Assembly: GCA_013115145.1 (NCBI GenBank)
Contig: JAAPAO010000395.1
Location: 1-33,378, forward strand
Direction: 5' to 3'
Source of the DNA: Perkinsus chesapeaki ATCC PRA-425
Lineage: Eukaryota > Protista > Perkinsozoa
Length of the DNA: 33,378 nucleotides
Positions within the stretch are counted from its first letter, which is position 1. Every line of letters starts with the position of its first letter. The position numbers were made by a program, and so were the translations under genes. The notes beneath the pieces were generated by a model, which saw nothing but the letters and a program-made list of their open reading frames with translations, was not told where the DNA came from and made no database searches. This document shows positions 3,539-33,058 of this stretch, piece by piece.

Positions 3539-6500
3539 TCAAAGACTATTCAAGTCAACGGAGGCAAACAACTTCTCAAGATCTTCGCCTTCTGTCTGAT
3601 CAACGCCGGTGAGTGGGATAGAAGTACTGAACAATGCCGAGAGCGAGTCCTTCGTCAGAAGTTTGGTGGCTCTAGTTGCCGACAGACTGCTGCTCGGTAG
3701 TGTTCTTTCCACCAACCAATCGCTCTCAACTATCTCATCAGTATACTTTTTGGGATCATAAACTAGCTCCCGTCCTTCCTCTTTATGAGCGGGTGGCTCC
3801 CGTGGTGAGAGCTGCGCCCATCGTTCGGCTTCATTCTTATCATCAGTTATGGCTAATTGGGGATCCTCCACGATGACCGGGAGGACCGCAACGCTGCTGG
3901 GCTTGTCCTCAATCGCCAGCACTGCTGCTGCTTCATCATCAGATGGCTCGACCAGTATAGCATCAACAACCCCGCTAACGTCAGCCTCCGTGCCAGCCTG
4001 CTCTATCTCCGTTCGCTGTGACCCGGCCAAGTGGAGCTGTGGATTAGGGGGCCCCTCATCATTAACACAGTGCACCGTTGATGAACTCTCCGACATAGCA
4101 GCCCTCTCCACTATAGCACTCACTATGCTCTGAGCCACCTTGCCAGCCTTTTCACCCTCGCCTTTCGAAGATGCCACAACCGGTGGAGCTGAAGGAGCCG
4201 GCTGTGACCGGCGAGTGAAAGGCCGTCCGCCAATAGAAGACGGTACTGAGGGCACCATAGGAATCATCCGTGGAGATCAAACACCTCACCACGTCTGGCT
4301 TTGAATCGTCGCACCAACGACAACTGTGGGGCTTTCGGTCGAGGCTTCGGCTTGCTCAGTCTCTCCACCGAGCTCCTCTGAGCCACAGCCATCGAGGTTC
4401 TGAGACAAAGACAATGAGCAGATATAACACCAAGAGATTACCGTAGCTGTTGGAAGCTCTCGATGGCATCCGACTCTGTAATAGCTTTGGTGCTGCCGTG
4501 ATGATGCACTTGCCTCCTGCCAAGCGCCCTCCTCAGCAACCTCCGGTCACTTGCAGCATTGCGTCGGGCGAAGGAACACCTGACATGTGGAAACTCCTCC
4601 AAGATATGAGATTGACCGTGACGTCACCGTGAACATCCAGCATCGATACTGGCCTCACCGAGGGAACCGGTCGTCCCTGGTTGAGTACTCCCGCCGCCGC
4701 CGCCGCAGCCCGCACATGACTTGTACACCTTTGCTGCATTTACGGAGCGCCAGAACTGCCCAGGGGGAGGGTCTCGACAAGTAACACCGTAGAGAGCGGC
4801 GGATCGGCGGTTCCCATCGGTACCTTCCTTCCCAGTCGTGCCCGGTATCCGACCCCACCTTCGCCGTTTAAGGCCTTCATTGATGGTACGTGATACCTCC
4901 AATACATGCAGCAACAGACCAAGCATCGTTCGATCATCGAAGGTCTCCTCGATACCACACTTACCCTATAAACCATCGGCTTGCCGACAGCGAGACGCGG
5001 ATAGTCCTACCTCAGACATTTCACCAACTGTACCTATTATTGTCGCCAAGCGGAGACCTGTTTCGTGACAGGAGTGACAGCGAGGATGCGAATGCGTATT
5101 ACAGAACATACCTGAGAGTCGAGTGTCTATGGAACTAGTCGAAGACAGCAGCGTACCTCCGCATTTGCAAGGGGTTGCTGAGGTGGGTAAAGGTTTCAGG
5201 CATCCTGGATGCATACAAGCAAAATGCTCCATAATCTGCCGGACGTTGAACGCCTTGTCTAGGTACGTCTTGGCCGCCAGCAGATAACCTTGTTGACACA
5301 ATGCCTACAGACCACCAAGTACAGCAGCTTGTTGAGCCCTGTTTAGGGTACCTTGGCGCGCTTAACCCTTCCCCATCGTCTGATAAGACTGTAACAGCCA
5401 GGTTGGCCGTTTTCAGATTTACTGCCCAACGAGGTAACGAAGTCGTCTATTGTCCTTGAGCGACGCCCCTGCCCAGCAGCGTGTTCCCCTGGTGCATGGC
5501 CGCCAGCAGCTGGGATGAATCTGAGCAATCCGACTCTCTGAAATGGTAAGGCTTCCTAACCCTACCGACAGTTATCGATCTCTCCGTTGAGCATGAATGT
5601 CGAGCGTCGCATCCGCTTAGCAATCCTGCTACCTACCAATATCGAATAGGCGAACCCATCTGTGGTGGAAGCCGCCGCCGGCACCTCCTGAAAGTCGGGC
5701 GACCATCTCATCGTACTGACTGGCCTTATTGACTTCGATGCTCAGGTGAACCTTTTGGTTGAAGCATGCACCGACGGATCGGCCCAGGGGAGCCCAGAAG
5801 CCGAGGCCGTGACGGCTAAGTGCCCAACGTCTGTGAGACTGAATCTAAACGTACCACTACAAAAACGCATCTCCCAATACGGATGTCCTCACGCGCTTCA
5901 TTAGGGTCTCCGAGCAATACCGAGCAAACTGCGGCGGAGCGATCTTCCAGAGCTTCGATACTTCCACTTGCTCACCCCGCCATGAGCATCGCTTCGGCAT
6001 CTTGATCGAAAGTCTTCTCTCGAAAGCAACAAACCTCGCAATGCCTTTCGCATCGCTCCGCCCAATAATTTTTTCCTTTGCCAACACGTCAAAGGTAAGG
6101 CCTTGAATGCGCACTTCAACCAAAGGCATATGCCTCTTCATCTCGATGTTGAGCGTGCCATCCTCTCCAACACTGATAGCTGCATTTATCACTCTTATCG
6201 CAGTTGATCGATCGATATCGTGGCACCCGAATAGATCACAAATTCTGTCCTCACCAACGGCTTGACAAAGGTCGGCGAAGAGGTGCTCGAGAAAACCGCT
6301 ACTGGTGACACCAAAAAGGTCAGAGGTTCGAGACACTGAGTGGTTCACAATAGTAAAGACCTTCCTCTTCAGTGCCGAATGTCGTTGCATGGCCTCGTGA
6401 AGCTCGGACATCCTCATTGCATCGGCCCGGTCTCCCTGGCCCAGGGGAAGGCGACCGCTAGGTGAGTCGATGGTGGATATAATCCTAAACAGCAAGCATC

Positions 6501-8114
6501 TCCTTCTAGAAGCGAACCTGTCCACCTCAGTTTGCGAGCTTCCTTCAGAAGGACCACGAAGGCATCATAGGAGTGATGCGGCCCGAGCGTTTCCTTGTAC
6601 TCGGCCAAAGCAGCCATCACCGCGGCATCATTTGGACCATGCCTTCTCAAGAGCTGGAATAACCGCATCGATGCAAGTTGAGATTCGGTGCTCATTGTAT
6701 GCCTCTTTGGTCGCGCTAGCTCGGATAGGGGCGTCGGGAGGATGTGCAGATATCTCGACTTCGACCTGCAGTGTGATTTCCACTAGTAATACGGATTTGA
6801 GGTTAACCGACCTTTCGAGAATATCTTTCCCCGATTGCTCAGCAAATCCCGCTGCTTCTTTCTGTTTCTTGATCTCTCGCTCAGCGATCTTCGTAATAAC
6901 ATCTAAAGCTTGCGAGCGGCTAAGTCCTCTGAGCCGGTAGGATGATTTTTGGTAAGGTGTTAAGGACGCCCAGAATCGGAACAGGGACGAAACATCAAGG
7001 CTTCGGTATCCGTTCTGTTTTTCGAAGGCACCCAGAATAGGAAATGTTTCATCGCGACCATCAATGAAGTTATGAAGGTACTCGAGCAACTGAGGCTCTC
7101 CAACCCTAATAACAGCAACGATTTGTTATTAAGGTCTTAGGCGATGGTTTCACCCCTTGAGCCCCCATTTGGCCTTGTCCTTGATGGATTTGAAGTATGC
7201 AGTGACATCACTAGCAACTAGCTTAGATTCTCCTTCGAAGAAGCTCGGCCGGTAGTCAGGATCCTTTGGTAAGATGCCATCGTCGCCCAGCCTTTTCCAG
7301 TCGGCGTCGCAGGCGATGAAGAGATCGATAACTCGTGTATATTGCAGCGGCGGCAGCAGCAGCAGCTTCGAAGGTGCTACGGGGCGATGGTATACAAGTA
7401 CTATTGACCATCACTCACCATCGTTCTTGCGGTCTTCTGAATGCACTCCTCCAAAAGGTGAAGATAGACTCCCCAGAGTGGAGACAGGTTTAAGGAGAGG
7501 TTCAATGGGCGAAGGCTCAGCACGACCGCTACTAGCTATGGTCGACATTGACAGGCTTCGAGACGAAACCTTTACAACCTTCCCTGGTAAAAGGGGCCGA
7601 GAAGAGAGCCAGTCCACCTTGGAGTACATAATACGATAACGATTAAGCAAATAGTCACGTCTACCTCTCTCCGAATGGCGAAGAACTTGTACACAAGTTT
7701 AACGAGGTCCCTACGCCCAATCCGGTAGACCATGTCATACTCGGAATCGGACACAGCGGTCATCTCAGTAGTAGGCCCCCCGGAACTAGCTGCAGCATTG
7801 AGGCAGATCGATGCACAAGGAAGGCTCTTCCTCTGGTAATGATCAATCCAATATCTGATTGTCACTCTTGTGGCTCTTATATGACACTCCTACTGGATAT
7901 AGACTTCCTCATCTTCCGGTGGTGGCTCGCATGCCGTTTGCTTTGCAAAGCTCTTAATTAGCGAGATCACAACACCTGCCTCTATCGTGGACATATTCTT
8001 CTCGCTGAGAACTCTGTGAAAAGGCCCATCAGCTTCGGAAAGCATCTCGAATAAGCTCTGGAATGGTACTGCTGAAGCCTTCATGGATGGAGACGTTCCA
8101 GTCATGAGGAGCAT
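3539..8114 (-). CDS. Large multi-exon hypothetical gene (may be 2 genes): possible PAP/TUTase-like region, AN1 zinc finger, acidic low-complexity C-terminus
   Basis: ORF blocks 7890-8114, 7572-7865, 6628-7089, 5857-6525, 4966-5301 and 3539-4267 can be joined in phase by about 35-85 nt introns (e.g. 6654-6702 GC-AG, 5112-5156 GT-AG). Not every junction is certain. Confidence 0.55.
5068..5217 (-). other. AN1-type zinc finger (split by a 45-nt intron, 5112-5156)
   Basis: Spliced CMHPGC-LKPLPTSATP-CKC-GGMF-C-NT-H-SHPRC-H-S-C matches C-x4-C-x10-C-x-C-x4-C-x2-H-x5-H-x-C exactly. Confidence 0.8.
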
Positions 8115-8121
8115 AAAGCTA

Positions 8122-8909
8122 CAGTACGCGACATCTAGAGATGCGCGGACTGGACGGGCAGAAATATCGAGAAGTATGGCGAGTTTCGAGCTATTTCCTT
8201 TTCTATTGAATTCTCCATACTCGATTACCCATAAATCGAGCTTGCCCCGCTATAACTCAACAAAAAAACTTTTAGCCATTTTCGTGCTGAGTGGCGCGAC
8301 CTTTCAGCCCGTTCACGACGGTTCTGGGCAGTTCTGGGCTGTCTCGCTGAGAGGCCGACATTTTGGCGGTGCACAGAGCTTGTGCCACGCAGTGAGGCAT
8401 AGTGGCTCCTAGTTATTCTTACTAAAAATCTCTTAGCACACACCGTTGTTCACCAGGACACGGGTCTACTTGGCATATGATGAAGAGGATAAACAGGTGG
8501 GGGCTAGACTCTAGTCACTCGTGTCAGGGCGGTAGGTTGCCCAACCGAAGTATGCGAAGTACGCGTCACGGGATTCGCGTGTCTACCCCAAAGATTCCGT
8601 ATGCTCTCGTGTTACTCAGGACAGGTTCGGTATCTGTATGCCTGTCTTTTCCTCAAAATTTTTTCAATTGTATGAAGTTCGGATTGGTTGCACTTCATGT
8701 CCGAAATGTCCGCAAGTGGAAACTTCGCAAAGTCCCACTTTCGACAACCCTAGATATTGCCATAACGAGCGCCATTAGTAGTCGCACGCATATGCATAGC
8801 GCAGCCGAGTAGTCGAGAAGTCCCTCATTCCTATTAAGTATCAGTCTATGAGGGAATCTTACTTAACAAGCAGTTGTAACTTGACCTATGACATCATTCG
8901 CGTTTCTGC
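8122..8909 (+). repeat. Left inverted arm (788 bp)
   Basis: Reverse complement of 9561-10507 apart from substitutions and indels. Homology continues past a 7-nt divergent patch (8884-8890) into cargo codons 2-7 (8891-8909). Confidence 0.95.
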
Positions 8910-9310
8910 TTCTCGTCTACCTATTGTTCTTTCAAGGATCACAAGCTTCTGTTGGCCCTACAGGGAAGTACTTTAAGAAGATCGGTGATAACGTTTGTGT
9001 CCAAGTGGATTGGCTTAATGGTGAGGAGAACGCTGCCAGAAGAATAAACTTACTAGTGATGTGTGGTCAAGAACAGGAAAATGCCGTAGTGGATGTTGTA
9101 CAGAAGGGCCCTTCGAACTATACGATTTCTGGAGCATCATACAATGAATACAATGACTTCATTCTGTACGTGATCGGATACATGTGCAGAACCACCTTCG
9201 AAGTAGTCGACGGAGATTTGATGTACTACAGTTACAACGCTCAAAAAAACTCAGTGAGGACGGATTTCGGCCTAGACCCATATGTAGAATTGTTCCCCGG
9301 TTCTTGCTAA
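8888..9310 (+). CDS. Small secreted protein, 140 aa, intronless, 4 Cys (element cargo)
   Basis: Signal-peptide-like MTSFAFLLLVYLLFFQGSQA/SVGPTGKY; Cys37, Cys59, Cys100 and terminal Cys140; sequon N77-Y-T. It is the only credible plus-strand gene inside a minus-strand gene block. Confidence 0.8.
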   Translation: MTSFAFLLLVYLLFFQGSQASVGPTGKYFKKIGDNVCVQVDWLNGEENAARRINLLVMCGQEQENAVVDVVQKGPSNYTISGASYNEYNDFILYVIGYMCRTTFEVVDGDLMYYSYNAQKNSVRTDFGLDPYVELFPGSC

Positions 9311-9560
9311 TGAAAAAGACACTTTTCGGCAAGTATCCTCCAGTTTGAAGTTGACTAGGCGATGAATACATATAGATTCATCTAAATCATATTGAAGCGC
9401 GATCATTCTGCGTTATAGTATTGTTGTACTGATTCAACCACTCAAATACCTATGTTATACAGGAAGAATCTTTTTTCCAATGCTTTTGGGTTAAGTCGCT
9501 TTAATATAAAGTTAGTTAATGTAAATGGCTGGTGGAAAGGAACTCGAAATCAGATCTGCT

Positions 9561-10507
9561 GCAGAAACGCGAATGATGTTCTACGCCAAGTTACAACTGC
9601 TTGGTAAGTGGACCTCTACTCTTTGCAAGGACTCCCTCATAGACTGACACTTGAAAGAAATGAGGGACTTCTCGACTACTCGGCTGCGTGCGACTACTAA
9701 TGGCGCTCGCCTCATGGCAATACTCCAGGGTTGTCGAAAGTGGGAATTTGTGAAGTTTCCACTGGCGGAATTTCGGACATGAAATGCAACCAATCGGAAC
9801 TTCACACAATTGAGAAAATTTTGAGGAAAAGACAGGCATACAGATACCGAACCTGTCCTGAGTAACACGAGAGCATACGGAATCTTTGGGGTAGACACGC
9901 GAATCCCGTGACGCGTACTTCGCATACTTCGGTTGGGCAACCTACCGCCCTGACACGAGTGACTAGAGTCTAGCCCCCACCTGTTTATCCTCTTCATCAT
10001 ATGCCAAGTAGACCCGTGTCCTGGTGAACAACGGTGTGTGCTAAGAGATTTTTAGTAAGAATAACTAGGAGCCACTATGCCTCACTGTGTGGCACAAGCT
10101 CTGTGCGCCGCCAAAATGTCGGCCTCTCAGCGAGACTTTTGGCCCTTATTCGTTCCCCGCTGGAAAAAAAAGCGTTCATATATGCTATAAAGGTCATTCA
10201 AAATGGCCCATTTTTTACGAGTAGTAGAAAAGTAATCTGCGTAGTATAATAAGCCGTAAGCAAAGAGATCCAGCTTCGGAAGCTGACCGGAACAAAACAG
10301 CCCAGAACCGTCGTGAACGGGCTGAAAGGCCGCGGCACTCAGCACGAAAATGGCTAAAAGTTTTTTTGTTGAGTTAGAGCGGGGCAAGCTCGATTTATGG
10401 GCAATCGAGTATGGAGAGTTCAATAGAAAAGGAAATAGCTCGAAACTCGCCATACTTCTCGATATTTCTGCCGGTCCAGTCCGCGCATCTCTACATGTCG
10501 CGTACTG
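9561..10507 (-). repeat. Right inverted arm (947 bp)
   Basis: Mirror of the left arm; carries an extra 162-bp segment (10137-10298) that is absent on the left. Confidence 0.95.
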
Positions 10508-11133
10508 TACTTGACACAATTAGGACCCGAATTTCACCAACTGCAAAACAATACGGCGTGTTATTAGGCGTGCTATTCCAACACCACTATCATCATCATC
10601 ATCAAGTGCTTAGTAGCTTCACCTACGCCCTCTGCCCCCCCAACTCTCTTTTTAATCGTACTATTGAATGGAATCTTTCACTAAATGGGTTCAATGACGA
10701 AGATTGTGTTACTGAAGGTCACGGTTGTAATAAAGCCGATGAAGGCATTCAAGTGGTCATACCGTCTACCATCAGTGAGCTTGCCTCACAAACGTAGACA
10801 CCGTTACCAATTCAACTACTTCGGCAAACCATAAGTCTGGCATGAGCACCTTGGCTAATTGGAAACTAGGCTGATAAACGCTGATTGAACGATGATGATC
10901 AAACCTGCTTGTAACAACTGAGAATACAGTGAATTAGGAGAGACTAATAAAACAGTATTGAGGTGGACATCAACAGGATTTCAGATATTCATGGGGCAAC
11001 GAAGAATAATGGTTGATAACCTACTTGTGTGGTGAACCGGCTGTACGCGAGTGCGATAATTTTAACAGGTGTCGACCAATTCACCTGAAGCCTGTGTTAT
11101 GTGCAGAGTACATGTCATTTGGCTCACTGAAGG

Positions 11134-12450: not shown

Positions 12451-14400
12451 TCATGAATAAGAAGTCAGACCGCCAGCGCCCGAGTCGGGTTTGGAGGCGC
12501 TTTCTCGCAGCATGCGGCTTAGTTCCGCAAGATGTGCCTGAACTTCCTCAATGCAGCTCAAGGCTTCGTTACGAATGCTGTCCTCGGCTTGTAAGGCAAA
12601 GTCAATCTAACATTAGAAAACGTCTACGATATCGATGCTACTAGTCCCCAGGGAAAACAACAAGTGGAAAGTTTATGAATGGTGAACTGGAGAATCATCG
12701 CATTGCCGCCTCCTACACCGCAGATACGGAGGATTAAAGACGTAGGATGTCCCTCATCCTCAATCAAAGGATACAACAGTGCTAAATATCTACCAAGATA
12801 CCTCAGCACATGCCCTCTGTGTGGTAGAGACCAGTTGATGGTCAGCATATATAGTACGGGTTGATAAGGATAAAGCTTCATGTTCGACATCTCGAAGGCT
12901 TGCTCCCAGTTGTATACATGCTTCCTTTAGCACTTCAGCCTAAAGTAAGTGTGGTCGATGAAAGGAGGCGAGTCGAAGGTCCTGTAAACTTATCCCACTT
13001 TGCTATTCCGATCGCTCTCAGCAGCTCGAAGTCTCTCGACTGCCTCCTCTATCTTGGTTTGGGCAACAGCCACACGTGCCTTCTGCTCAGAAAGTTCGAA
13101 CGCTCTTGTAGCGCGGTCACCTGAACAAGCCCAGGCAGATGAAGTGCAAATGACACCACTAGCATATACCCTTGCAGTGCTCGACATCCACTATTTGTTT
13201 CTTCTTTGCTTCTTCGAGCTCCTCCACCTTCCGCTGTATAATCGTGGTGTCGCTGATGTTCGCCACTTCAGTCTCCAATGCAGCGCATCTCTCTATCAAC
13301 GCCTTCTCCTCCTCTGCTGCATGAACTGCTAAGCTCTGAGCATCGCCGACTATACGTAACAGCCATACTGCTGAGGCTCATTCACCTCCGCCTTGGCAAA
13401 CTGCTCTTCAGCGCCATCAGCTCCTTCGCGCAGTGTAAGTACTTTACAATCAATAATAAGCCGGAGCTCACGCATTCTGGTATCCAGCTCCTCGGAGTCG
13501 GTAGGAGCACCTGTCAATGGAATGATAAATCTCGCCCCAGATTTTCGCCGCTGCCCACCTAACGAGCTTTCACTTGTTAACCAATCGGGCACCCTTTCCC
13601 ACACGGAGATGATGCCCTCAGGAGTCTCGGCAGCGCTACACGCGCAGTGCAGTTCGGCGATGGTATCTCGTGCAGCTTCGGCATCCCTAAGTTCGTTGGC
13701 CGCTCTCTCGGCGGCGTTCCGCGCTTTCCCAGCTTCGGCACGTGCGCACCTGTTAGAAGATACGCCAAGAAACAGCAATAACTCTCCGCCTGACCGTGAT
13801 GCATCTTTGGCAGCCTCGGCCTCCCTCTGCAGAGCTTCCAGGGTTTTGAGACTCCGAGCCCTTTTCGTTGGTACCGAAGCCAGCCTCTCCTTCGCAATTA
13901 AGAGTTTACTACAACCAGAGGAACTCCGCCATTCCAATGCCTGTCAGACAATACCCTTCGATATCGGCCAATCGAGCTGTGGCGCGTGACTGTAGCTCCG
14001 CTGATGTCACCGATGCTTGGTGTGTTATATCAAGAATCCTAATAAAGGTCCCATTTGAACCTATAAGATATCCTTCTTCCGAGCCCACCTTTTAGCATCA
14101 ACCATCGCTGAGGTACATTTAGCAAGATGGTCCTCTGCCTTAACCACCGCAGCTTGAGACTCTTTCACCTCTGCACAGGTATGAGCCAACGAACTCACGT
14201 CCCTGACTGGATCAGCTCGATCAGCCTCCCGACCAACACTCGACCAGGGTCACTTCCGTCTTAAACTTCCAGCCGTTGAAAGTAGCTTTTTTCGCGTTAA
14301 GAGGAGCTTGTCTGTCTCCTTCCTGCTTTCGTGAGCTGACGTCGATGCCTGAGCAACAGCAGTGACCCCGTTATACCGAGATAGCCGACACACGTGGCCG
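12451..14400 (-). CDS. Long coiled-coil protein (multi-exon; 5' end uncertain, may be continuous with the PX gene)
   Basis: Ala/Glu/Arg-rich heptad exons: AEVKESQAAVVKAEDHLAK, LKTLEALQREAEAAKDA, KARVAVAQTKIEEAVERLRAAE; last exon AEDSIRNEALSCIEEVQAHLAELSRML...TSYS* (stop 12451-12453). Confidence 0.6.
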
Positions 14401-14504
14401 ACTCAATGGTGGCCTAGATGATATTAACATATATAGCATTGATGACGAGGAGAGCGGTACAGATCCAATTGCTGTAGCATAATTTTATTAGTATTAAAAA
14501 TCAT

Positions 14505-16348
14505 TTAAAAGGTGACCCTAGGGCTTGTCTGCCATTCATATATCACACACAAGCAGTCCAGCAAGGGCGCCTCTCACATACCTTATCCCAGGAGTCAACC
14601 AGCCTGGCTTGCGCCGTGGCAAGGGAATCGAAGACAGTGACTAAACGAGAAACAGCATCCTCATCAAGGCCCTCTCTGGCAGGCCCTCTCTGTTTAACAT
14701 CATTCTCCTTTGCTTTCACAGTTAAGTGGCAATCTTTTGATATACCTGCGGGTAGATGAGAGTTGGCTACGGATAGACAGCGGCCGCTCACCTATCAGCT
14801 GCTCATGCCTCTCACTGAGTGTTTCACCACATGCTAGTTCAACGCATTTTATCCGCGTCTCTGCTGCGTGTTCAGTTAAGCCCTTATCATCGCACCACCC
14901 CTGGCACGCCAAAAGCGTTTCACTCGCCTCCACGCTGTTGTGGTTATCAATGAGCCAGCAAAGCTGCCCCAGAACAGCATCATAAAGCTGCTGCCCTTTG
15001 CACCTGCTGATGGTAGCATCGGCTTCATCCGATGCCGTCTCGACAGCAAAGTCGATCAGAGGTCCTCGGAAGTAGACTGTGAGAAGTTTGCAGGTGAGGC
15101 TGGCGATGACATCGTGGTCGTTCAATAGGAGCCGTATTGGCTTTGCTGAGCGCTCATCGAATACGGCATCCAATGCCTCGAAAAGACGCAGTTCATCGTC
15201 GGTGCTGCCGATGGCCCTATTAACCCGATCTAACTCGGAGGCAAGAGTTTCTCGTAGTCGATCTCCGTGTGGTGTAAGAGTTTCGTTCTCGTGGCGGAGA
15301 AGGATAGATATCATCAAGCTGGTGATGGAAGTGGTGGCCACGTCATTTACTGCCATCAACGCCTCTATCAACTGCAGACCAGAACTCTGCCTATCAGTTA
15401 GGGCGATCTCGAGGTCAGGGTCCGCGGCCATAGCAATCATCAACATGCAGGCAATACAAAGGGAGAGCCGAGGATTGGCAGTGTAACCTGGTAACGGACA
15501 GGTGGCACAACAATAGAGCGATAAGCTTAGATACCAGAAAGCATCTCTATTAGCTCTAGAATCCCAGCGTCAACCTGAAAGTACACAAAGACGGCTGCTG
15601 GATGCGATCGTACTGTTGCCAACAAGACCTGAGATGATAACTCAGAGAAGCGTCACAGTGTATGAGCTCCCACATTAGTAGCTTCAACTAGCGCAGATTC
15701 CTGCGATAGGGCTCCGATAAGGACTCCAATGCCCCCCTCTTCAGATATCGCTCTGCCGGACTGACTAGAAATTTGGCCCAAGACGGCCAAGGCAAACCCT
15801 GTAACCATGTGATCTTGTCCACTTCGCACATGCTCCAGTAGTGCCCTCAAGACTGGCCTACACAAAGCTACTGACGCCGCGAAGGTAGGCTGAAGCGAAA
15901 GCGGGCAAAGTAGCGGCAAGTACTGTGCTTCCTTGGACCAAGCGTATCGGGCTATTATGCAGATCTCCACACAGGGAGCTTCAAGGAAGTGCCACACTTG
16001 GTTGTCTTCGTACACCTTTTTGATGGTTATCACTTGTCGAAGATAACGCTCAAGCCCTTGTCGTCTGACCTCAACAATTGCCGCATCATGAGCCCGCCAC
16101 GGAAGATAGCGCTTCGGCGGCAGCCTAACCGAGCAGCCGTCTAGTAAATGCGATATTGCTCGATGAAGCGAATGAAATTGCGAATATCGACGGCGAACCG
16201 TCCACTGCATAACACCGCCTGGCCCCGAGATGGCTAAGGTGTACCAAACTGGCGTTGTCTCTGCGTTCGCATGAGTGACTGTGATACCCAAAACGCGTTG
16301 TGAGGATGCTGAAGAGTTGGAGGCCCTTTCACGCCGGTGCTGAGACAT
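14505..16348 (-). CDS. PX (Phox) domain protein followed by helical ARM/HEAT-like region
   Basis: PX signature VWYTLAI...WTVRRRYSQFHSLHRAI...VRLPPKRYL...EVRRQGLERYLRQVI...VWHFL. In-phase introns link it to ORF 14700-15446 and the exon ISKDCH...VDSWDK. Confidence 0.8.
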
Positions 16349-17313
16349 GTTTATAGTAATTAGGCGCTGATGACAACACCATGGCTGCTCTTGAACAGTG
16401 ATACGATAATACAACAACTCCTCCGGCCACGGACAAGTTATCGATGAAGTCTGAGAGGAAACCCCTCCCCCTACTCCTGCTGCTTTGGGCCCAGGACCAG
16501 AGTAGTCCTATTTGACCGTCAACAATCAGTCGGCAATACAACCCAACTGATCGCAGATGGCCAAGTGACATCTCTTATCTCTCTTGAGTCCGGGTTTAGA
16601 GGAGCCATTGTTTGCCATCAGATCGAATAGGAGCAGCATCGTGTAAAGTGATGTACGAACGCAAGACAAGCATTCTCGGACACACCAGCATAAGTGAGAG
16701 CAGCACAACAACATCAACACCATGGAAGAACGAACATCACTAGTGAAACAATTCGCAATAGGCATTAACCACATCCTTTCCTGTCTGTATGTTCTTATTT
16801 TTGAACATGTGACCAATATTATCGATTATCATATTGGTGACTTCCTTGTCACAGCGTCTAAATAAAACAAACCATCAATCAGCATAATACTTAGTTCTGC
16901 TACCCGAGCCGGGGTTTGGTATCCGTACAAATCTTCCTCACCGGTAACTCTCCAACATAATGGACTTCCATAAAACGTGTATCTCCTTCCATATAACACT
17001 CACTAGTGTCCTACCGCGCGACGCACTGCGTAGCAATTAACGGAGTGAGATCCTCCTACATCTTCAGTCCAGTCGAGCCGGTCATCGTCGAGCTCTTCAT
17101 CAAATGTCAGATGAGCTAGGGGTCGAGTGATTCCCTGCAAAGGTAGTGCAATAAAGAGCACGTTGCTGTTCAGCAATCGGTGGCTCCGCTACCCCCTATT
17201 TATACATTATCCGTCTCGCCGCGAGAAATACAGTGGAGGGGTATTAATTATAAAATGCCAACCGTATAAATAGCTGCCAAGGCTGACGGCAGAGTTAGAA
17301 TGGCCATCAAGCA

Positions 17314-17807
17314 TCATTCGATTAAGCGACAAGATTTCTTAAAATGTGGCCTATTATCTCACTCGTGCGTCTATCGGTGGGGATCTCATCAATTTCGGTC
17401 TCTGTCGTGGCGCAGCTTCTTTCATCTGGGATGATCCAGGTTGCGATGGCGTCTGCAAGCAATTCGACATGAAACAACTGCGCGGAAGCAATCGTGAAAC
17501 CTAAGCCTACTCCTCCGGCTCCGGCTCACCTCCTCCGGCTCCGGCTCCGCAAATGTGACCTTTCTACTCGATGGAGGAGAAGCGCTTTTCCTCTTCTAAA
17601 GTTCGAACAGAGTAGGCAAATCCACAATCGAAGGCTTACCAGAATACCCTTCGAGGACTTGCCGTTATGAACCGTGGAGGACGCCTGAAGAGGTGGTGCA
17701 CTAATTAGTGGAGAGTAAGTTAATAAGAGAACACTTACCAACCCACTACACTCGAGGAGAGCAGCGGCAGCTAAGACAGCTAAGAATAGGAAGGTCGGAC
17801 GAAGCAT
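17314..17807 (-). CDS. Small predicted secreted protein (about 114 aa) with GILK and RKVTF motifs
   Basis: Signal-like MLRPTFLFLAVLAAAALLECSGL. Two clean phase-0 GTAAG...AG introns (54 and 44 nt) give ASSTVHNGKSSKGIL/KRKSASPPSSRKVTFAEPEPEE. The last exon (LFHVELLADAI...RLIE*) depends on an ambiguous acceptor. Confidence 0.65.
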
Positions 17808-17931
17808 TGATAATAAAGAATGTCGAAATTCTTACACGACCATCTCGGTGCGCAGACAAAACAATTATTTAAAGAACAACATACATAACGATAATGCTGA
17901 TAAATATCTTAACACCGGCGGCGGTCACTCG

Positions 17932-18666
17932 TTACGTGGTACGAAATGGGATATGATTAATGACATATGGTGGCACACAGAGACATCTGACTAGCCTATC
18001 CCGACTGCTACTGCTGCTGCTTTCGGTAGTGGTGGTGGTGCTGCAACCCAGATAAGGTACGTGTGCTTGAAAGAACTTCAGGGCGGCCTCAATAGTCCTA
18101 TCGGTGCAAAAACTGATGAAAGGCATGGCGTAATATCCTTGTACGCTGGTGATTCACTACAAGTAGGCATCGGACTGTAAACGCTCGGTATGGTTCCTCG
18201 CAATGGTGATCTCTTCAACATTGCATACTTCCTCTTTGTAGGTGAACTTGACAGTGATAGCTGCGCTCCTCAGAGCTTCACCAGGCGTATCGTCACATAA
18301 TACCTCACATGAATTAGGCCCACTTGGCTGAAAAAGAGGAAGATGGTATCCAAAGTGACGCCAAGGTGCTGCTGCTGCTGCTGCTGAAGGCCTTCTTCTT
18401 CTTCTTCTTTGTTGTTGTTGAGAATCGTTTAATTGCAGCAGCACACTGGAAATGTGACATTCCCTCACCTCCGTCCTCTCCCCATTGTAGATCTCATTTG
18501 CATCTTGATGCTCCACTTCATTCTCAACCTTCACTGCTTCTTTAGTCATTTGCACCTTCGGTCGCCCCTGCCGGCCTTGCTGTCCGCTGTGGTGCGTTGG
18601 TATCCTCCCGCCGTCCCCTCTTGCAGTATGAGGGTGATGGGGCTGTGGCCCAGAAGCAAATGACAT
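17932..18666 (-). CDS. Hypothetical multi-exon protein (fragments)
   Basis: ORF 18157-18666 has protein-like ends and a microsatellite-rich middle (likely intron). Next exon FCTDRTIEAALKFFQAH follows a GT-AG intron. Confidence 0.4.
18367..18420. repeat. Compound trinucleotide microsatellite (GCT)n-(CTT)n-(GTT)n
   Basis: Directly visible in the sequence. Confidence 0.9.
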
Positions 18667-19890
18667 TCTTTAATTAACCTATCATTTTACCGCACCTGAC
18701 CTGTTTGAATATCCATCACTTCCTGAAATCCATCATAGGCCTTTTTCGCCGTCGAAGAGATCGAAGACCAAATAGGCCTCGCTGTGTCCTGGGTTGAGAA
18801 AGTGGTGAGGTGGGAAATGTTACATGACGTATCGTTAAAATTATCCAGTGATAAACGTTATAATGCCAATCAACATCACCGAGAGGGGCTCTATCGGGGC
18901 GCCGCCACCCTTCACATTGCTGTTATCGGGGAACCTTATCTTCACACCAATAAGCAAGCGAATCTTCTACAGGTCCACCTCAGTGATCTAGTTGCTTTTC
19001 TCAACCTACAGTATCTAGATCGGCCTGCTTCAGTGCTTACCTGCACACGTTCTATAACGACCCCTATTGGCCCAGGAGTTATCCTTCCCGCGATTCGTTC
19101 ACCACTACGTTTGCCGTGTATCGCGGAAGGATCCTGAGGAAGAGGAAGACATTCCGATGGTAGCAATAACTATCCACCAGAGGGAGCTCGATAGCACCAC
19201 CACTACCTGGCGCGGCGGGAGTGCTTCGATCTGCTATACGCTTATTATGGCGACTCCGTCTTACCACTAGATCGGGGATGTCGTCGACAATCCTGACTTT
19301 CACCTTCGCCTTTCGAGATTTCGAGGCACCTCTCGCTGGCACGGTTGAAGACATGCCCAAGAGGAAAGCCGCGACGGCGGCGGCGGCGGGGGCGATAATA
19401 ATGTAGTAAGTCATCATACAAGTAACCAATCGAAAGCAAGAATGAAACACAACTGCGAATCTTGGCTCGAATACCGATCAGCGAATGCCATCGCTGCCTG
19501 TCAGAGAAGCAGCCGTTTCAACTATCTCCCGATCGTTGATGCGACGTATGACAATTCTCCAGGACAAGAAAACGGCGAAGATCGAGGAAGGGGAACAATG
19601 CTCACACTGGGACATTGTACGTGAGACAGCAGCAGCAGCAGCTCGCAAGTGTCACGCATTATAGAGCCGCAGTGGCGGTGGCTAACAAGGTGCTGAATGA
19701 GCAACTTTTAATTCTCTTAACATAGACGAGAAAACGGGTTGAGTTGAACAAAAAGAGATATAGATTTATTAGACAACTGATAAAAATGACATCCACAAAT
19801 GACATAAAACATGATGAAAAATTCCGCCTTCCAGTGGTGGCTGCCTTAAGAATCAGGCAGCAGACATCCTCATGTTGGTGCAGGCCTACT

Positions 19891-20052
19891 CTAATTTATG
19901 AAGACATTATCCGAGTAAAGAGAGCCGTCATCAGAGTCAGATGCTCTTTTATCGTCGACGGAGGAGGAACCACTCGATGGTTTAGCTACGAAGTAAATGG
20001 CACCATCATCATCACTATCATCATCTTCGGAATCATCTTCGGAGTCATGACC
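19891..20052 (-). CDS. Acidic exon of a hypothetical gene
   Basis: After the TTTAG acceptor: GHDSEDDSEDDDSDDDGAIYFVAKPSSGSSSVDDKRASDSDDGSLYSDNVFIN*. Confidence 0.35.
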   Translation of the reverse strand, partial: GHDSEDDSEDDDSDDDGAIYFVAKPSSGSSSVDDKRASDSDDGSLYSDNVFIN

Positions 20053-20328
20053 CTAAAGACATTCTGATCTGAACCTTACTATAAAATCATTATTACTTGT
20101 AAGTAGGAGAGTGGCCTACGTCGAGATTGCATCAGCTCATCTATCTCCCTTTGACTCTGAAAATGGATACTCAACCACTGTAAGCCATAAAAGGGGCATT
20201 GTAGTAGAAGCCTCACGACGACGACGACGACGACAGATGAGCGATATACTGCTGCCGTCGCTGCTGCTACTACTATTAGGGTAATACGTCAAGATTAAAA
20301 ATAGTTAAATCTCACTAAGACTTATTAC

Positions 20329-20909
20329 CTTTTCCTTGTGTAGCACAAAAGGCTGGGACAGTTTACCAGGTGCCTGAGTAGTATCAACCTCACAAGGAGC
20401 CCTCATGGAAAGAGATAAGCCGTAATATAACAACAACAGCAACAACTGTATATTTGCCAGCCATTGGTGAACTTGGAAGAACAGAGTAGCACGCAGTCTT
20501 ACCGATGCACTTGACGAAGGCGGCTCTGGAATATCTCTATCGAGCAAACGCCTTGAGACGGCTCGTTTTGTTGGAAGCGATGCGTGCTGTTAAAACACAT
20601 ATTCCATATTAATGCAAAAAACCAGGAACATGTGACGAGTGAGACGTACTGGATAGGTGGATCTGCGCTTGGAGAAGTCACCGGTCTCAGGTTTGGCTGG
20701 AAGGCGTAGATCTTTGGGAGGTTGCTCATCATGCGGGTACGATGCAAGGTTTTTTGTTGGCTTTAGCTGAAGCAGCATTAAGGGTGAGTGCTTCACAAAA
20801 TTATCACTGTTACAATGTCCATTGACTTTGGTGCTTCCAATTCCCAGTTTGCAGTTTGCCTGAGCAGAGTCTCTTTTCTCAGGTTAACCTTGGGCTTTGA
20901 TTTTGAGCT
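20329..20909 (-). CDS. Run of phase-0 exons of a hypothetical protein (possibly the 3' part of the zinc-finger gene upstream)
   Basis: SSKSKPKVNLRKETLL...KSMDI/LKPTKNLASYPHDEQPPKD...RRSTYP/HASLPTKRAVSRRLLDRDIPEPPSSSAS/...VLHKEK, separated by GT-AG introns. Confidence 0.5.
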
Positions 20910-21495
20910 CTGAAGTGCAAAAAGAAGGAGGCATTATTAATCCACAAGGATCGTAGTAGTGTATGTGATAGAAATTACCAATATTCCTATCTCATACTCA
21001 CCTTATCAGTATTGGGAGCAGCAGCATCACTTTGGGAAAGCAGTAGGCCTCCTAATACCACAGTGACGACGACGGTGTGGATCGATGGGATAGGGCGGCG
21101 CATATTAAACAGATGAGTGGTGAAGTAACCAAACCATAACAGTTGGAATATGCAATTTGCTCGAGAGACATAGAGTTACCAAGGCAACAAGATAATCGCT
21201 GCTGTTGCGCCGCCTTCTCTTATCGGGCGGAAATTATATTACATTCGAGAAAGGCACCAACGATGCTATAATGAAAGGGGATGCCACAATAGTTACACGA
21301 CGGTAGCAGCAGCACGAACAAGCTGCTGCGGTGAACAATAGCAGCTACCTCAGATATCCACCCGTAATAGTTACTAACACAATAATACTGATAATAGTAG
21401 AAGACAAAATGACATATAACGACTGTTATGAAACTCGACCAACCATTGGGCTGCTTCTTCTTCTTCTTGCCACCCTCCTTGAATCCCATATGTGC

Positions 21496-23970
21496 CTACT
21501 CCGTCACTGTTCTGGTTTGCTCATTGGCACCGGTCGGCGCCGCTGTCTCTGTCCAGTGCTTGAGGCTCTTCACATCAAACTTAACAACATTATCAGTGCT
21601 ACCAACCAGGGGTAAGGTCATGATGGCATCCCTAGTTGGGAAGAGTACCGCGGTGCTTGTATGGGCCCTGGAGGTTACATGCTCGATGAGTTGGCCCAAT
21701 CCTTGACACCCATTCTTGCACAGGACGCACGAGAATCTCTCAGAGTTGGCCTCATCGATACCATATTTGCTCAAAGTATCCCATAGCCTGGCCCGCTGCT
21801 CAAACAGCACAGTCTCCGAGGCATTGTCCGACCTGAGCAGGCCAGCAGCAGCAGCTGTCGGCCTTGAGTAGCGATGGTCATCACGACGGTCCTCAGTCGG
21901 TCGAGAGTCACGGAATGGATCTTTAATTCTGCCACCTCGACCAAAGCGTTCGAGGTGACGTAGGAACTCGTTAAATAAGGGGAAGTTCTCCCTATCACCA
22001 CGGATCTGCGACCTAAGATACCAATTATTCGTAAAATAAATAGCAAATGCCTCCTTACCCGTCCTCCCCTTTAAAGAGTCCCTTCTGTATAATCTCTATG
22101 TGGGCTGGTATTGCCAGCTCTAGCTCTTGTATTTTCTCATCTGTAATTGTCGGGCAGCTCTGAGACCCAGCAGATATGAAGCTCCTATATCCCTCGACCC
22201 ACCCTGGACTTCTCCAAAGCAGCTACCCAGGCCTTATCAACTTTCTCAGCCTTCAATACTGCCACTTTAACAGCAATCCTTTGACCCCAAAAATCAACGT
22301 ATCTACGGCGGGCCAGGTGAATGATATCTTCTCGATCCAGTTACGTGTTCTCCTCTTTTTCCTCCTCAGAGGCTCTGACCATCGTCACCGCGATGCCCAC
22401 TGGTTCAAGTGCTCGTGTTTTCCATAAAACTCCAGAGTGCGGTAGACGAAGATACTCTCCATCACACGGCAGGAGTTGTCGAGTGAAGTTTATGAATCTA
22501 ATGATAAGATATCATCTATTGGCCGCCGCTGCCGGTGGTATCAGCAGCAGCCTACTTGGCAACGGTCTGGCCGAGCTTCGGATGCGGCCAGGAATATACA
22601 CACCTCACAATGCCACTGGGGATCCTTTTCTCAGGAGGGTGGTAGCCCTCCGGCCAGCGTGGAGTGGTCAACCCGAGCTCAGGCAGATCCTCCTCCTCAC
22701 TCTTGTCCTGTGGTTGGCTAGGCGGCGGCGCCGGCTTGGCTGGCTTCTCTGGGATAGTGTCGAGGCGACTGGGGCCGAGCTGTCCTTTCGGTGGCTTCGT
22801 ATCCTCTACGAACTCTTCCCTCCTAGTAGCCGCCGGTGCTCTGGAACTACTACTGACTTTGTGCCTCACCGAATCCAGGTCAGCCTGGCACGGCACGTCG
22901 GCCTCGGGCTCAAAGTCTGGAGGCATCTGCTGTGGAGATCTCGCCAATGGTGACAGGGTCCCCTTCTCCCGTGGGATCTGCCGATCTTCTTGACTAGCGT
23001 TTCCTGGAATAGGTCCATCTTGCTGATGATGGCGATCCACATAGATAGCGTTATCGAATGTCGACTGCTGCGGTGGCGGTGGGAGCCGCGGCCCGTCTCG
23101 AGCACCGCCCCCTATCTCCGAGTTCAAGTTCTGCCGTATAGGGATTGTGCCTCCCTGTTGGCGCTCATATCTCTGTTGTTCCGGTAGCAGTCTCCTATTA
23201 GGTAGAGGTTCACGGTAGTCATAATAGCCAGCCACGTCATCGGTATAAGGATATTGCGATGGTTGTGGAGGCGGAGGAGGCCTTGGAGCTGATGACGCAT
23301 AGCTATACCGGGGGCCTTCATAGGTAGTAGAGTATCTATCAGACTCAACTGTGTACTCAGAGTACCCCCCTACTGAGGGATGAGAGTAAGGAGGAGGAGG
23401 AGGCTCCTGGATTCCACGGAGGACAGGTGCTGCTCGACGATACGTTTCATCCAGACTCGGTTGAGATCCTGTGTACGAGTAGTAGCTCGAAGTTGCGGGT
23501 ACCTCTCGAGAACTATAACCACCGTAAGGTCGCTGTACATCAGGCCTTGAATAGTCCTCATAGTAATAGTAATCGGCCTCTCGGTAGCGAGATGGCTGGC
23601 CCAGAGTTGGTGAGGGTTCTCGAGTGCCTTCCAGTGCAACAGCATCATACCGTCCACTTGTCGCTGCTTCTTGCCTGCCTATCCACCCATTCGACGAACC
23701 TCCAGGTCCATCATGTCTCCCCTGATGATACTCTAAACGTGAAGGCTCGCCCCCAGTTGGGTAGAGCGGTCGAGGCTGTGGGTCCGGTGGCATCGGGGGT
23801 GGCCTTGTAGTAGGCTTCGGAGGCCTACGAGGCGCTCCTTGCTGGAGGTCAGTGGAGCCCAAAGGCCTTATAGAGGGACGGGAGTCTGGAGGCTGGAAAC
23901 AGTCCATCCTAGGACGTCCAGTGGCGTCCAGCACACGGCCATTACACTCACCAACGGCCGAATGCCTCAT
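21496..23970 (-). CDS. Pro/Tyr-rich low-complexity protein with a U1/matrin-type C2H2 zinc finger (multi-exon; 3' end may extend further)
   Basis: A 1.4-kb first exon (22552-23970) joins by in-phase 42-58 nt introns to TVAK/FINFTRQLL...ENT/YVDFWGQ.../...GEDG/SQIRGDRENF...; motif CVLC-x12-H-VTSRA-H. Confidence 0.7.
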
Positions 23971-25396
23971 AAGCTGATGGTAATGCCCCTTTGATGACTC
24001 AAGTCGAACTCAATTACAATGGTAAATAGATACCGCTCCTTCATACTAGACATGGCTTCAACTCACCTTTAATGGGTACAATTCTACAGTACAAAGATTC
24101 CCCGGAGGTTAACAGCTGTAAGACTGCCGGCCGGCCGGCGGCGTTCCTCCCGTAAATGTCCATAGATCTTTCACACAATTAGTGCATCATAAACCGGCTA
24201 GCATCCACTTCGATCGAATATAATCTGCTACTGTATAAAAGGGAGGTTACGTATTCAGAGAAGGCCCCACGTGTACAGTAGTAGGAAATACGCAAGCCAC
24301 AGGTTGCATCGCTCCGCCGATTTTTCAAAATTTCTACCCGAATCTTGCTCCTTATTACAACTTCTCCCAATAGCGTTTGACACTACTACCTCCATTGACT
24401 AGGTGCATTTGCCCTATATTTTTGCCCTCGGAGCTATAGTGCTTAACGACTAGCTTACCGTATCAGTCAATAAAGCAACGCTAGCGTCATCATTTGAGTA
24501 CTTCAGCAGTAGGGTTAGACATTGTGGCTCGTAGAGACCATATCGCTCCACAAATTTACAAGCTCACTTTCTCACCGTATTTTTGTCAACTCGCCTTCAA
24601 ACAAGGTATTTCTCTAAATCGATTATTACCATAGCGAGGGGTCTAGATTGCCCACAAATAACGAAATGTGGCTTCAGATTGCATTACTATCGTCCGCTAT
24701 CTCTCTCCCTAATGGACGACACTTCCCCTTCTGCAAGCTCCTCCTGTACAGAGATGTCCACAGGCGGGCTTTCCACCGTTTCTACCCCGACGATGGCCCT
24801 GCGTTTGCCTACACTAGGCCTCGCTTCTCCTACTGTAGAGCTTGAGAGTGATTATATTGACGAAAGTACGGTTGCCGTCTTTGTCACGTCAAGCCACTTG
24901 AATCATTTTAGGCGACACTCGTTCAAGACGATCAGCGGAGTGTTCATGGCAGCCTTACCATCGATCGCTCTGGGGCCTTGATCGACCTTATCATAGAGAT
25001 CTTGCCACACAACAGGAGCAGCAGGAAAAGAAGAGGAGATTTGTTTCATCTGATGTACCATCTGTTAAATACAGTTATCCCATTGAAGAACCCATGAGAA
25101 TCAAACGCCGAGCCGTGAAGCATCATCAGGACCAATAAGTCCTTGTACATTCCATAACCTTGGACAGTTCCTCTCATTATCGAGTCACATTCCTATCAAG
25201 GCTTTTATGCCATTTTGCTGTGTATTACCAGTATTCGAACTCCCACCAACTGTAAACCTTCTGCCAATGCTACTATCCATTATATTCTCGTCACATTATT
25301 GCGCTTGTTTCTCTTCGTCTACGGTTGCTGTCTCATCCCTCCTGCCCCTTGTGTTTCACCACACGATACAGCCCCTCTATCCCAGTATAATTTAAC

Positions 25397-26548: not shown

Positions 26549-26699
26549 ATGTCCCTAAAGGGGCTTTAGTAGTCTCTATTATATTTTCTTGAATTCTTCT
26601 TCACTTCATGGCCTCAGTGGCTCTCTGATATCTCAGTGTGATTCTGCCCCCGGTTGTTGTGTTCAGTAGTCTTTTGAAGTACTCCTCTAGTCCTTTTCG

Positions 26700-32886: not shown

Positions 32887-33015
32887 TGATGATTATGATT
32901 GTGTTTTCAGCAAGAGCTGTTGTGTTATGAAGTCTATGACTATGACACGCTTACACACGCCTTGTGATGGTGTTAGTGTTCAACCAGTGTGTAAGTTACG
33001 AATCTATATAGCTTA

Positions 33016-33058
33016 GTTGTGTGCCTTCAGCTAAGTGACTAAGCTGAAGGCACACAAC
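33016..33058. repeat. 43-bp near-perfect palindrome between convergent gene ends
   Basis: GTTGTGTGCCTTCAGCT-AAGTGACTA-AGCTGAAGGCACACAAC: 17-bp perfect arms, and the inner AGT/ACT can also pair. Confidence 0.95.

What the first reader, a model, noticed from the sequence alone, without database searches (positions are those of the whole stretch)
8120..10509. Pack-type Tc1/mariner-like foldback element carrying a secreted Cys-containing cargo gene
Seen: TA|CAGTACGCG...CGCGTACTG|TA ends and 788/947-bp inverted arms around a 651-bp unique core. The core holds an intronless 140-aa signal-peptide protein on the strand opposite to all surrounding genes. Established: a TA target duplication with CAGT termini is typical of IS630-Tc1-mariner/pogo elements. 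Inference: a non-autonomous element that moves secreted (possibly host-interacting) genes, which could be a dispersal route for an expanded secreted-protein family in a parasite-like genome.
Basis: partly seen in the sequence, partly recalled or inferred. Interest (0 to 1): 0.8.

Follow-up and report, generated by a model that had tools for sequence, protein, structure and literature searches.

The report
Gene-carrying inverted-repeat element, Perkinsus-like genome
A 2.4-kb stretch with long inverted arms and transposon-style ends (TA next to CAGT) really does enclose an intact gene for a small secreted protein found only in Perkinsus shellfish parasites, but nothing available here shows that it has ever moved or exists in more than one copy.

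Summary
TA|CAGTACGCG…CGCGTACTG|TA ends (8120-10509) bound inverted arms of 788 and 947 bp around a 651-bp core. The core holds an intronless 140-aa ORF.

The ORF is a real gene. Full HMMER finds a family of about 135-140-aa proteins in Perkinsus olseni and P. chesapeaki, each with a signal peptide and four conserved Cys. AlphaFold with the family alignment gives pLDDT 87. There is no Pfam, PDB or Foldseek relative.

The arms are non-coding, 4.4% diverged with six indels, so this is not a palindromic read artefact. The hexamer TACAGT occurs at only 4e-4 per position, so Tc1/mariner/pogo-type ends are the best reading (about 0.55).

Mobility is untested. The source genome is not in any searchable collection. 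I found no second arm copy, empty site or transposase.

The arm includes the gene's own ATG and first seven codons, so the arms were built from the gene's flank and did not pre-exist it. And ten intact family genes at nine loci in relatives have no such ends; two of those loci are tandem arrays.

Verdict: partly supported. Interest is moderate.

The parts
8120..8121 (.). Left flanking TA (putative target-site duplication copy)
   Evidence: TA is the only direct repeat at the flanks. Because TA is palindromic, it can equally be read as 2 more bp of the inverted repeat.
8122..8909 (+). Left inverted-repeat arm, 788 bp, starting CAGTACGCG. Its inner end includes the 5' flank, ATG and first 7 codons of the enclosed gene.
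   Evidence: No Pfam hit in its ORFs. Non-coding codon scores. No internal sub-repeats. No Rfam match.
8390..8662 (.). 273-bp stretch of the left arm that is 100% identical to 9815-10087 in the right arm, flanked by stretches that are 3-12% diverged
   Evidence: Inference: gene conversion between the arms, or constraint.
8888..9310 (+). Intronless gene for a 140-aa precursor: hydrophobic signal peptide (residues 1-20, cleavage predicted by eye after SQA), and a 120-aa acidic mature protein with 4 conserved Cys (C37, C59, C100, C140)
   Evidence: gene-like codon score in this frame only; family alignment; AF2 pLDDT 86.8; hydropathy.
8910..9560 (.). Unique core, 651 bp: the rest of the CDS plus 250 bp of 3' flank
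9561..10507 (-). Right inverted-repeat arm, 947 bp. Its inner end carries a decayed copy of the gene start (TAGAAC where the left arm has TATGAC).
10137..10292 (.). Segment of about 152-156 bp present only in the right arm (a deletion in the left arm or an insertion in the right; unresolved)
   Evidence: The left arm has a 10-bp tandem duplication at the matching point.
10508..10509 (.). Right flanking TA
5860..8114 (-). Neighbouring multi-exon minus-strand gene. Its first in-frame ATG (8114) lies 5 bp from the element's left TA, so the element sits in its 5' UTR or promoter.
   Evidence: a run of positive-scoring minus-strand ORFs. No Pfam hit and no homologue found.

Best explanation
This is a non-autonomous DNA element with IS630-Tc1-mariner/pogo-type ends: CAGT termini next to a TA. 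Almost three quarters of its length is one long inverted repeat. Its interior holds an intact host-family gene for a small secreted 4-Cys protein specific to Perkinsus.

Proposed history (inferred). An element end became linked to the gene and its 5' flank. The long arms then arose when that whole left side (terminus, about 770 bp of flank, and the first 22 bp of the CDS) was copied in inverted orientation to the other side of the gene, for example by template switching during break or gap repair, or by aberrant transposition. Since then the arms have diverged by about 4%, apart from a 273-bp tract that is still identical and may have been homogenised by conversion between the arms.

Proposed mechanism (inferred). 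If a matching transposase exists in the genome, it would bind the two near-identical termini and cut and paste the whole 2.39-kb unit, gene included, into a TA.

What is shown: the anatomy, the termini, that the gene is real and what family it belongs to, and that the arms are non-coding. What is not shown: any movement, any second copy, any transposase.
For: - The repeat ends exactly at TA|CAGT on both sides, with unrelated flanks. 25 of 26 terminal bases are identical.
- TACAGT occurs at only 4e-4 per position and strand, so a random duplication breakpoint would rarely give these ends.
- No longer flanking repeat exists, which argues against superfamilies that leave longer target duplications.
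- The arms have no coding signal, Pfam domain or Rfam family.
- The unit sits in an intergenic or 5' UTR position and points opposite to its neighbours.
- It is the only large repeat in 33 kb.
- Arm divergence of 4.4% plus indels rules out a palindromic read artefact.
- Tc1-like elements are reported in P. marinus: PmTRT, 48 copies (PMC5630946).
- The gene is real: 9 HMMER hits, best 1.1e-23; four invariant Cys; AF2 pLDDT 86.8; gene-like codon score.
Against: - Only one copy is known. No arm-like sequence is elsewhere in the window, in 106 kb of P. olseni, P. chesapeaki and Logan loci, or in the metagenome, viral and prokaryote collections.
- No transposase was found in the window.
- TA is palindromic, so the 'duplication' cannot be told apart from two more bases of the inverted repeat.
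- Arms of 788 and 947 bp are far longer than usual Tc1/mariner terminal repeats, and no repeated transposase-binding motif is visible inside them.
- The repeat contains part of the CDS, which a plain local inverted duplication explains just as well.
- Inverted segmental duplications without such ends do occur in Perkinsus (L006).
Confidence: 0.55

Rival explanations
1. A local inverted segmental duplication with no transposase involved. The gene has always been at this locus. About 790 bp of its upstream region plus the first 22 bp of its CDS were copied in inverted orientation downstream of it, by fold-back or template-switch replication or repair. The TA-CAGT at the outer edge is coincidence.
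For: - The repeat includes the gene's own start, and the right-arm copy of the ATG has decayed.
- Only a single copy was seen wherever I could look.
- There is no transposase and no sub-terminal binding-site repeat.
- A P. olseni locus holding a family member shows nested, diverged inverted duplications without transposon-like ends (L006).
- TA is palindromic, so it adds only 2 bp of extra repeat.
Against: - The outermost six bases being TACAGT has a chance of about 4e-4.
- The structure sits 5 bp from the neighbour's ATG, which means the gene's 'native' upstream region would abut another gene's start.
- The closest homologue, in P. chesapeaki, lies in a different gene neighbourhood. It may be a paralogue, so this is weak evidence.
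Confidence: 0.3
2. An assembly artefact: a chimeric or palindromic long read, or two diverged haplotypes of a heterozygous polyploid genome joined in inverted orientation.
For: - Perkinsus assemblies are reported as polyploid and heterozygous (my own knowledge of the literature, not checked here).
- 4% arm divergence is in the range of allelic divergence.
Against: - The arms differ by 34 substitutions and six indels, including one of about 152 bp, so this is not a missed-adapter palindrome.
- The structure is internal, with different unique flanks on the two sides that continue into different genes.
- The repeat ends at the same base on both sides.
Confidence: 0.05
3. The ORF is a chance reading frame inside a repeat and not a gene, so there is no 'cargo'.
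For: The word-index protein search found nothing, there is no Pfam hit, and the exact protein is not in the collection.
Against: - Full HMMER finds 8 true family members (a ninth hit, P0008, is a repetitive false positive).
- Length, signal peptide, four Cys and several motifs are conserved.
- A family HMM scores the window ORF at 6e-49 (the ORF was part of the training alignment).
- AF2 gives pLDDT 86.8.
- The codon score is positive only in this frame.
Confidence: 0.03

Closest known systems
Non-autonomous IS630-Tc1-mariner/pogo elements, including Stowaway-type MITEs and Fusarium 'mimp' elements near effector genes (my own knowledge)
   Same: A TA next to each end. Termini start with CAGT. 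No transposase of its own. Sits in gene-proximal non-coding DNA. Like mimps, it is associated with a secreted-protein gene of a parasite.
   Different: Those elements are tens to a few hundred bp long, have short terminal repeats, occur in many copies and carry no gene. This one is 2.39 kb with 0.8-0.95-kb arms, holds a complete gene, and is known from one copy only.
Fold-back Tc elements of Caenorhabditis elegans: Tc4 (about 1.6 kb, about 770-bp arms, short loop) and Tc7 (long arms whose tips match Tc1). From my own knowledge, not checked here.
   Same: Tc-type elements in which almost all the length is one long, non-repetitive inverted repeat, mobilised in trans.
   Different: Their loops are short and non-coding. 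Tc4 duplicates TNA. Their mobility and transposase are demonstrated; here neither is.
Pack-type gene-capturing transposons (Pack-MULE, Pack-CACTA and similar)
   Same: Terminal inverted repeats enclose host-derived coding sequence and no transposase.
   Different: They belong to other superfamilies with 9-bp or 3-bp target duplications. They usually carry gene fragments, occur in many copies, and have identifiable parental genes. Here a whole gene is enclosed, its start lies inside the repeat, and no parental copy or second copy is known.
Drosophila Foldback (FB) and Galileo long-repeat elements (my own knowledge)
   Same: Very long inverted arms make up most of the element.
   Different: FB arms are built of tandem sub-repeats and give 9-bp duplications. 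Galileo is P-like with 7-bp duplications. Here the arms have no sub-repeats and only TA is repeated.
Inverted segmental duplications around genes in Perkinsus (P. olseni locus L006)
   Same: A family member lies between inverted copies of flanking DNA.
   Different: The L006 arms are 69-85% identical, 7 kb apart, include parts of other genes and lack TA-CAGT ends.

Membership tests
IS630-Tc1-mariner/pogo (non-autonomous member) | Insertion at TA with a TA on both sides | tested here: met
   TA at 8120-8121 and 10508-10509, with no longer direct repeat. Caveat: TA is palindromic, so this cannot be told apart from 2 more bp of inverted repeat.
IS630-Tc1-mariner/pogo (non-autonomous member) | Terminal inverted repeats starting CAGT/CAGR | tested here: met
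   CAGTACGCGACAT… at both ends, 25 of 26 terminal bases identical. Chance frequency of TACAGT is 4e-4.
IS630-Tc1-mariner/pogo (non-autonomous member) | A matching DD(E/D) transposase with related termini in the same genome | not testable with these tools
   None found among the window's ORFs of at least 100 aa or in the arm ORFs. The source genome is not in any searchable collection. The literature reports Tc1-like PmTRT in P. marinus, but the text I read lists no terminal repeat for it.
IS630-Tc1-mariner/pogo (non-autonomous member) | Several copies, or polymorphic empty sites, as evidence of transposition | not testable with these tools
   One copy in 33 kb. None in 106 kb of related loci. 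None in the metagenome, viral or prokaryote scans. These collections are not expected to hold the genome.
IS630-Tc1-mariner/pogo (non-autonomous member) | Short terminal repeats (tens to about 250 bp), sometimes with repeated binding sites inside them | tested here: not met
   The arms are 788 and 947 bp, and no repeated internal motif goes beyond chance 12-18-mers.
Pack-type gene-capturing transposon | The internal sequence is a copy of a host gene whose parental copy lies elsewhere | tested here: inconclusive
   The gene belongs to a host family. No parental copy could be sought in the same genome, and the window holds only this member. The gene's start lies inside the repeat, which does not fit simple capture between pre-existing arms.
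Drosophila-type Foldback elements | Arms made of tandem sub-repeats, with a 9-bp target duplication | tested here: not met
   No tandem repeats in the arms. No 9-bp flanking repeat.
Unnamed Perkinsus family of small secreted 4-Cys proteins (the enclosed gene) | About 135-140 aa, intronless, hydrophobic N-terminal signal, four conserved Cys, shared motifs (VCV..W, YNDF, DGDL..F.Y, C-terminal G.C) | tested here: met
   phmmer E-values from 1.1e-23 to 4e-4 for 8 members. C37, C59 and C100 are invariant, and the terminal Cys is present in every full-length member (it is missing only from the mis-spliced P0002 model). Full-length intronless ORFs in relatives. All are named 'hypothetical protein' of P. 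olseni or P. chesapeaki, and one is labelled 'Secreted protein' by UniRef.

The most novel reading that the evidence does not exclude
A Tc1/mariner-type long-arm element in a perkinsid parasite that is still mobilisable and carries a complete, expressed secreted-protein gene from place to place. That would be whole-gene transduction by a cut-and-paste TA-element, and a way to seed new copies of a host-facing gene family, with the inverted arm possibly also giving antisense or hairpin RNA control of the gene.
Probability: 0.12. Interest if true: 0.65.

Novelty: new variant of a known kind. Interest (0 to 1): 0.4.

Why it matters

This locus defines a previously unnamed, lineage-specific family of small secreted disulfide proteins with a confidently predicted fold that has no known relative.

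If the enclosing structure is mobile, it would be an unusual case of a TA-inserting cut-and-paste element carrying a whole functional gene. It would link transposons to the turnover of secreted-protein genes in an alveolate, as is seen for effector genes in fungal and oomycete pathogens.

If it is only a local inverted duplication, it is an ordinary structural variant. Its main value is then the gene family it drew attention to.

Tried and rejected
1. Word-index protein search with the ORF: nothing. Full HMMER was needed.
2. Exact look-ups of the ORF, four arm or arm-overlapping ORFs and seven other window ORFs: none on record. So the source genome is not in the collections, and copy number cannot be obtained by this route.
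3. Homologue search with the left-neighbour exon, to fetch an orthologous 'empty' site: no hits. The syntenic Logan contig L001 stops at window position about 13.8 kb, short of the element.
4. Exact-pattern scans for the terminus and for the perfectly conserved mid-arm in metagenome, viral and prokaryote collections: 0.
5. Transposase remnants in the arms and transposase genes in the window: none by Pfam.
6. RNA genes in the element: none by Rfam at E<=1. No tRNAs in the window.
7. Sub-terminal repeated binding sites or tandem sub-repeats in the arms: none convincing. I saw by eye an 8-mer (AGTACGCG) shared by the terminus and position 8559; it is within chance.
8. Composite model, with two separate elements flanking the gene: rejected. 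The inner ends of the arms have no CAGT/TA and run into the CDS.
9. An exon spanning the empty site: the reconstructed empty site gives only a 129-codon plus-strand ORF of unremarkable score and a minus-strand ORF starting at the neighbour's ATG. There is no evidence that the element splits an exon.
10. Single-sequence AF2: poor (pLDDT 49), so not used.
11. Function of the protein: Foldseek against PDB and BFVD gave no match at E<=0.001 and low TM-scores (at most 0.43 and 0.51 on the query). There is only a faint lipocalin or lipoprotein-like flavour. The profile search against PDB sequences and Pfam gave nothing.
12. A second TACAGT…ACTGTA pair at 17229-20182 (18 of 26 bases): no supporting repeat or transposase, so treated as chance.
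Full report
**1.

The sequence, the repeat finder, a self-BLAST of the element against the whole window and a direct alignment of the left arm with the reverse complement of the right arm all show the same structure.
- The inverted repeat starts exactly at TA|CAGTACGCG (8120/8122) and ends at CGCGTACTG|TA (10507/10509).
- The arms are 788 bp (8122-8909) and 947 bp (9561-10507), around a unique 651-bp core (8910-9560).
- The bases outside the two TAs are unrelated. No direct repeat longer than TA exists at the flanks.
- 25 of the 26 terminal bases match.
- It is the only large repeat in the 33-kb window.

**2. The arms are real, old and non-coding**
- They differ by 34 substitutions in 776 aligned positions (4.4%; 20 transitions, 14 transversions) and by six indels.
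- The largest indel is a segment of about 152-156 bp found only in the right arm (10137-10292).
- Identity is uneven: 96-97% in the outer 200 bp, a perfectly identical 273-bp tract (8390-8662 = 9815-10087), and 88-95% towards the inner ends. I read this as old duplicates with a conversion tract (inference).
- This pattern excludes a missed-adapter palindromic read. The different unique flanks on the two sides argue against a haplotype fold-back mis-join.
- The arm ORFs have no Pfam match even at E<=1, and the longest have negative codon scores.
- There is no Rfam family. There are no tandem or sub-terminal repeats of the kind seen in Foldback elements or in Tc1-like elements with repeated binding sites.

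**3. The enclosed ORF is a real gene of a lineage-specific family**
- The 140-aa ORF (8888-9310, +) scores like the window's conserved genes in its own frame and negatively in the other five. It is among the best-scoring ORFs between 4 and 13.5 kb.
- The word-index search found nothing. An exhaustive phmmer search found nine hits. Eight are true relatives of 121-173 aa (E from 1.1e-23 to 4e-4). The ninth, P0008, is a repetitive false positive.
- All eight relatives are 'hypothetical proteins' of Perkinsus chesapeaki and P. olseni (species also via PMC11513098).
- The alignments show a hydrophobic N-terminus, four conserved Cys (C37, C59, C100 and the C-terminal Cys) and shared motifs.
- Two annotated relatives (P0002, P0007) have spurious introns. 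The underlying uninterrupted ORFs are full-length family members.
- In the window protein, residues 1-15 are strongly hydrophobic. SQA precedes a likely cleavage site after residue 20 (my reading of the -3/-1 rule; hydropathy). That leaves an acidic 13.5-kDa mature protein with one N-glycosylation sequon.
- AlphaFold with the nine-sequence alignment gives a confident model (pLDDT 86.8, pTM 0.78): a beta-rich domain with one long helix.
- Function stays unknown. Foldseek finds no match at E<=0.001 in PDB or BFVD, and TM-scores on the query reach at most 0.43 and 0.51. There is only a faint lipocalin or lipoprotein-like flavour. Neither Pfam nor PDB sequences match the family.

**4. Context**
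- The window is eukaryotic. It holds a PX domain and F-box/LRR proteins.
- Positions 13.9-27.4 kb are collinear with a Logan contig from run SRR12548988, at about 61% protein identity in the PX gene.
- Together with the family distribution, this places the window in a Perkinsus-like genome that is neither of the two annotated species (inference).
- The left neighbour is a multi-exon minus-strand gene (5860-8114). The element's TA lies 5 bp upstream of that gene's first ATG.
- The gene inside the element points the opposite way to all scored neighbours between 3.5 and 16.4 kb.

**5. What it most likely is**

The ends are the strongest clue. TA next to CAGT is the signature of IS630-Tc1-mariner/pogo elements (established knowledge). 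The hexamer TACAGT occurs at only 4e-4 per position in this window. Tc1-like elements are reported in P. marinus (PmTRT, 48 copies; PMC5630946). I therefore favour, at about 0.55, a non-autonomous Tc1/mariner/pogo-type element with unusually long arms.

**6.
- The repeat does not stop before the gene. The ATG and first seven codons lie in the left arm, and the right arm carries a decayed copy (TAGAAC where the left arm has TATGAC). So the long arms were generated from the gene's own 5' side after the gene and the left terminus were already linked. They are not a pre-existing fold-back element that later captured a gene. Inverted copying of one end during repair or aberrant transposition would do this (inference). 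A transposase-free local inverted duplication would do it too, and that is the main rival (about 0.3).
- The 'dispersal route' idea finds no support in relatives. I examined ten intact family genes and three fragments at nine loci of P. olseni and P. chesapeaki (L002-L010). None has a TA-CAGT inverted pair, and none is tightly bracketed by inverted repeats. Two loci (L002, L010) are tandem arrays.
- One locus (L006) lies in the 7-kb spacer of diverged, nested inverted duplications without transposon-like ends. This shows that such duplications occur in this lineage without Tc1-type ends.

**7. What could not be tested**

Copy number, empty sites and a matching transposase all need the source genome. 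That genome is not in the protein or contig collections. The pattern scans of the metagenome, viral and prokaryote collections were empty, as expected. No transposase was found among the window's ORFs of at least 100 aa. Mobility is therefore unproven.

**8. Comparison with known systems**
- The element works like, and may be, a non-autonomous Tc1/mariner/pogo element. It meets the TA and CAGT-terminus criteria, fails the 'short terminal repeat' norm, and is untested for transposase and copy number.
- In form it resembles the fold-back Tc elements of C. elegans (Tc4, Tc7; my own knowledge). In content it resembles Pack-type gene-carrying elements, though those belong to other superfamilies and usually carry fragments.
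- It is not a Drosophila-type Foldback element (no sub-repeats, no 9-bp duplication).
- The association of a TA/CAGT element with a secreted-protein gene recalls Fusarium mimps near effector genes (my own knowledge).

**9. Verdict**

The most solid new result is the gene family itself. The element is best called a candidate long-arm Tc1/mariner-like non-autonomous element, or else a local inverted duplication with coincidental ends. The genome-wide arm search and the empty-site search listed under next steps would decide between the two.

Noticed in passing
window 8390-8662 and 9815-10087: A 273-bp tract is perfectly identical between the arms, although the rest of the arms is 3-12% diverged. 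This suggests gene conversion between the arms, or constraint on this part.
   Followed up: partly
window 13900-27400 vs L001 (Logan SRR12548988 contig): Collinear synteny with an unidentified related organism (about 61% protein identity in the PX-domain gene; DNA blocks 64-84% identical). The contig ends before it reaches the element's locus.
   Followed up: partly
window 17229-20182: A second TACAGT…ACTGTA pair 2.95 kb apart, with 18 of 26 terminal bases matching. There is no longer repeat and no Pfam domain inside. Probably chance.
   Followed up: partly
L002 4790-10381 (P. chesapeaki JAAPAO010000525): A tandem array of the family: one fragment and two intact genes, with direct repeats about 3.1 kb apart. 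The annotated product KAF4657751 (P0002) has a spurious intron; the uninterrupted 140-aa ORF 9959-10381 is the full-length homologue.
   Followed up: yes
L010 2027-2464 and 4535-4968 (P. olseni JABANP010000330): An intact family gene is followed 2 kb downstream by a second copy split over two reading frames (an apparent pseudogene). This is another tandem pair.
   Followed up: partly
L006 546-2297 / 9439-10235 and 7355-7829 / 8929-9401 (P. olseni JABANP010000015): Nested, diverged (69-85%) inverted segmental duplications surround a family member (5971-6417). The outer arms include part of a VTT-domain gene. There are no TA-CAGT ends.
   Followed up: partly
L009 2889-2961 (P. chesapeaki JAAPAO010000076): A perfect 36+36-nt palindrome lies 43 bp downstream of the true stop of a family gene. 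The annotated model (P0007, 173 aa) splices across it, but the uninterrupted ORF ends with the family's usual G-x-C.
   Followed up: partly
window 25397-26548 and 26700-28142: Two adjacent plus-strand ORFs (383 and 480 aa) with F-box-like and LRR signals. Both are conserved in L001. They look like a tandem pair of F-box/LRR proteins.
   Followed up: no
window 22552-23970 (-): A 472-aa proline/tyrosine-rich ORF with no Pfam domain, partly conserved in L001. A 210-aa ORF overlaps it on the opposite strand.
   Followed up: no
window 33001-33073: A 36-nt-arm near-palindrome (78% complementary, 1-nt spacer) near the end of the window.
   Followed up: no
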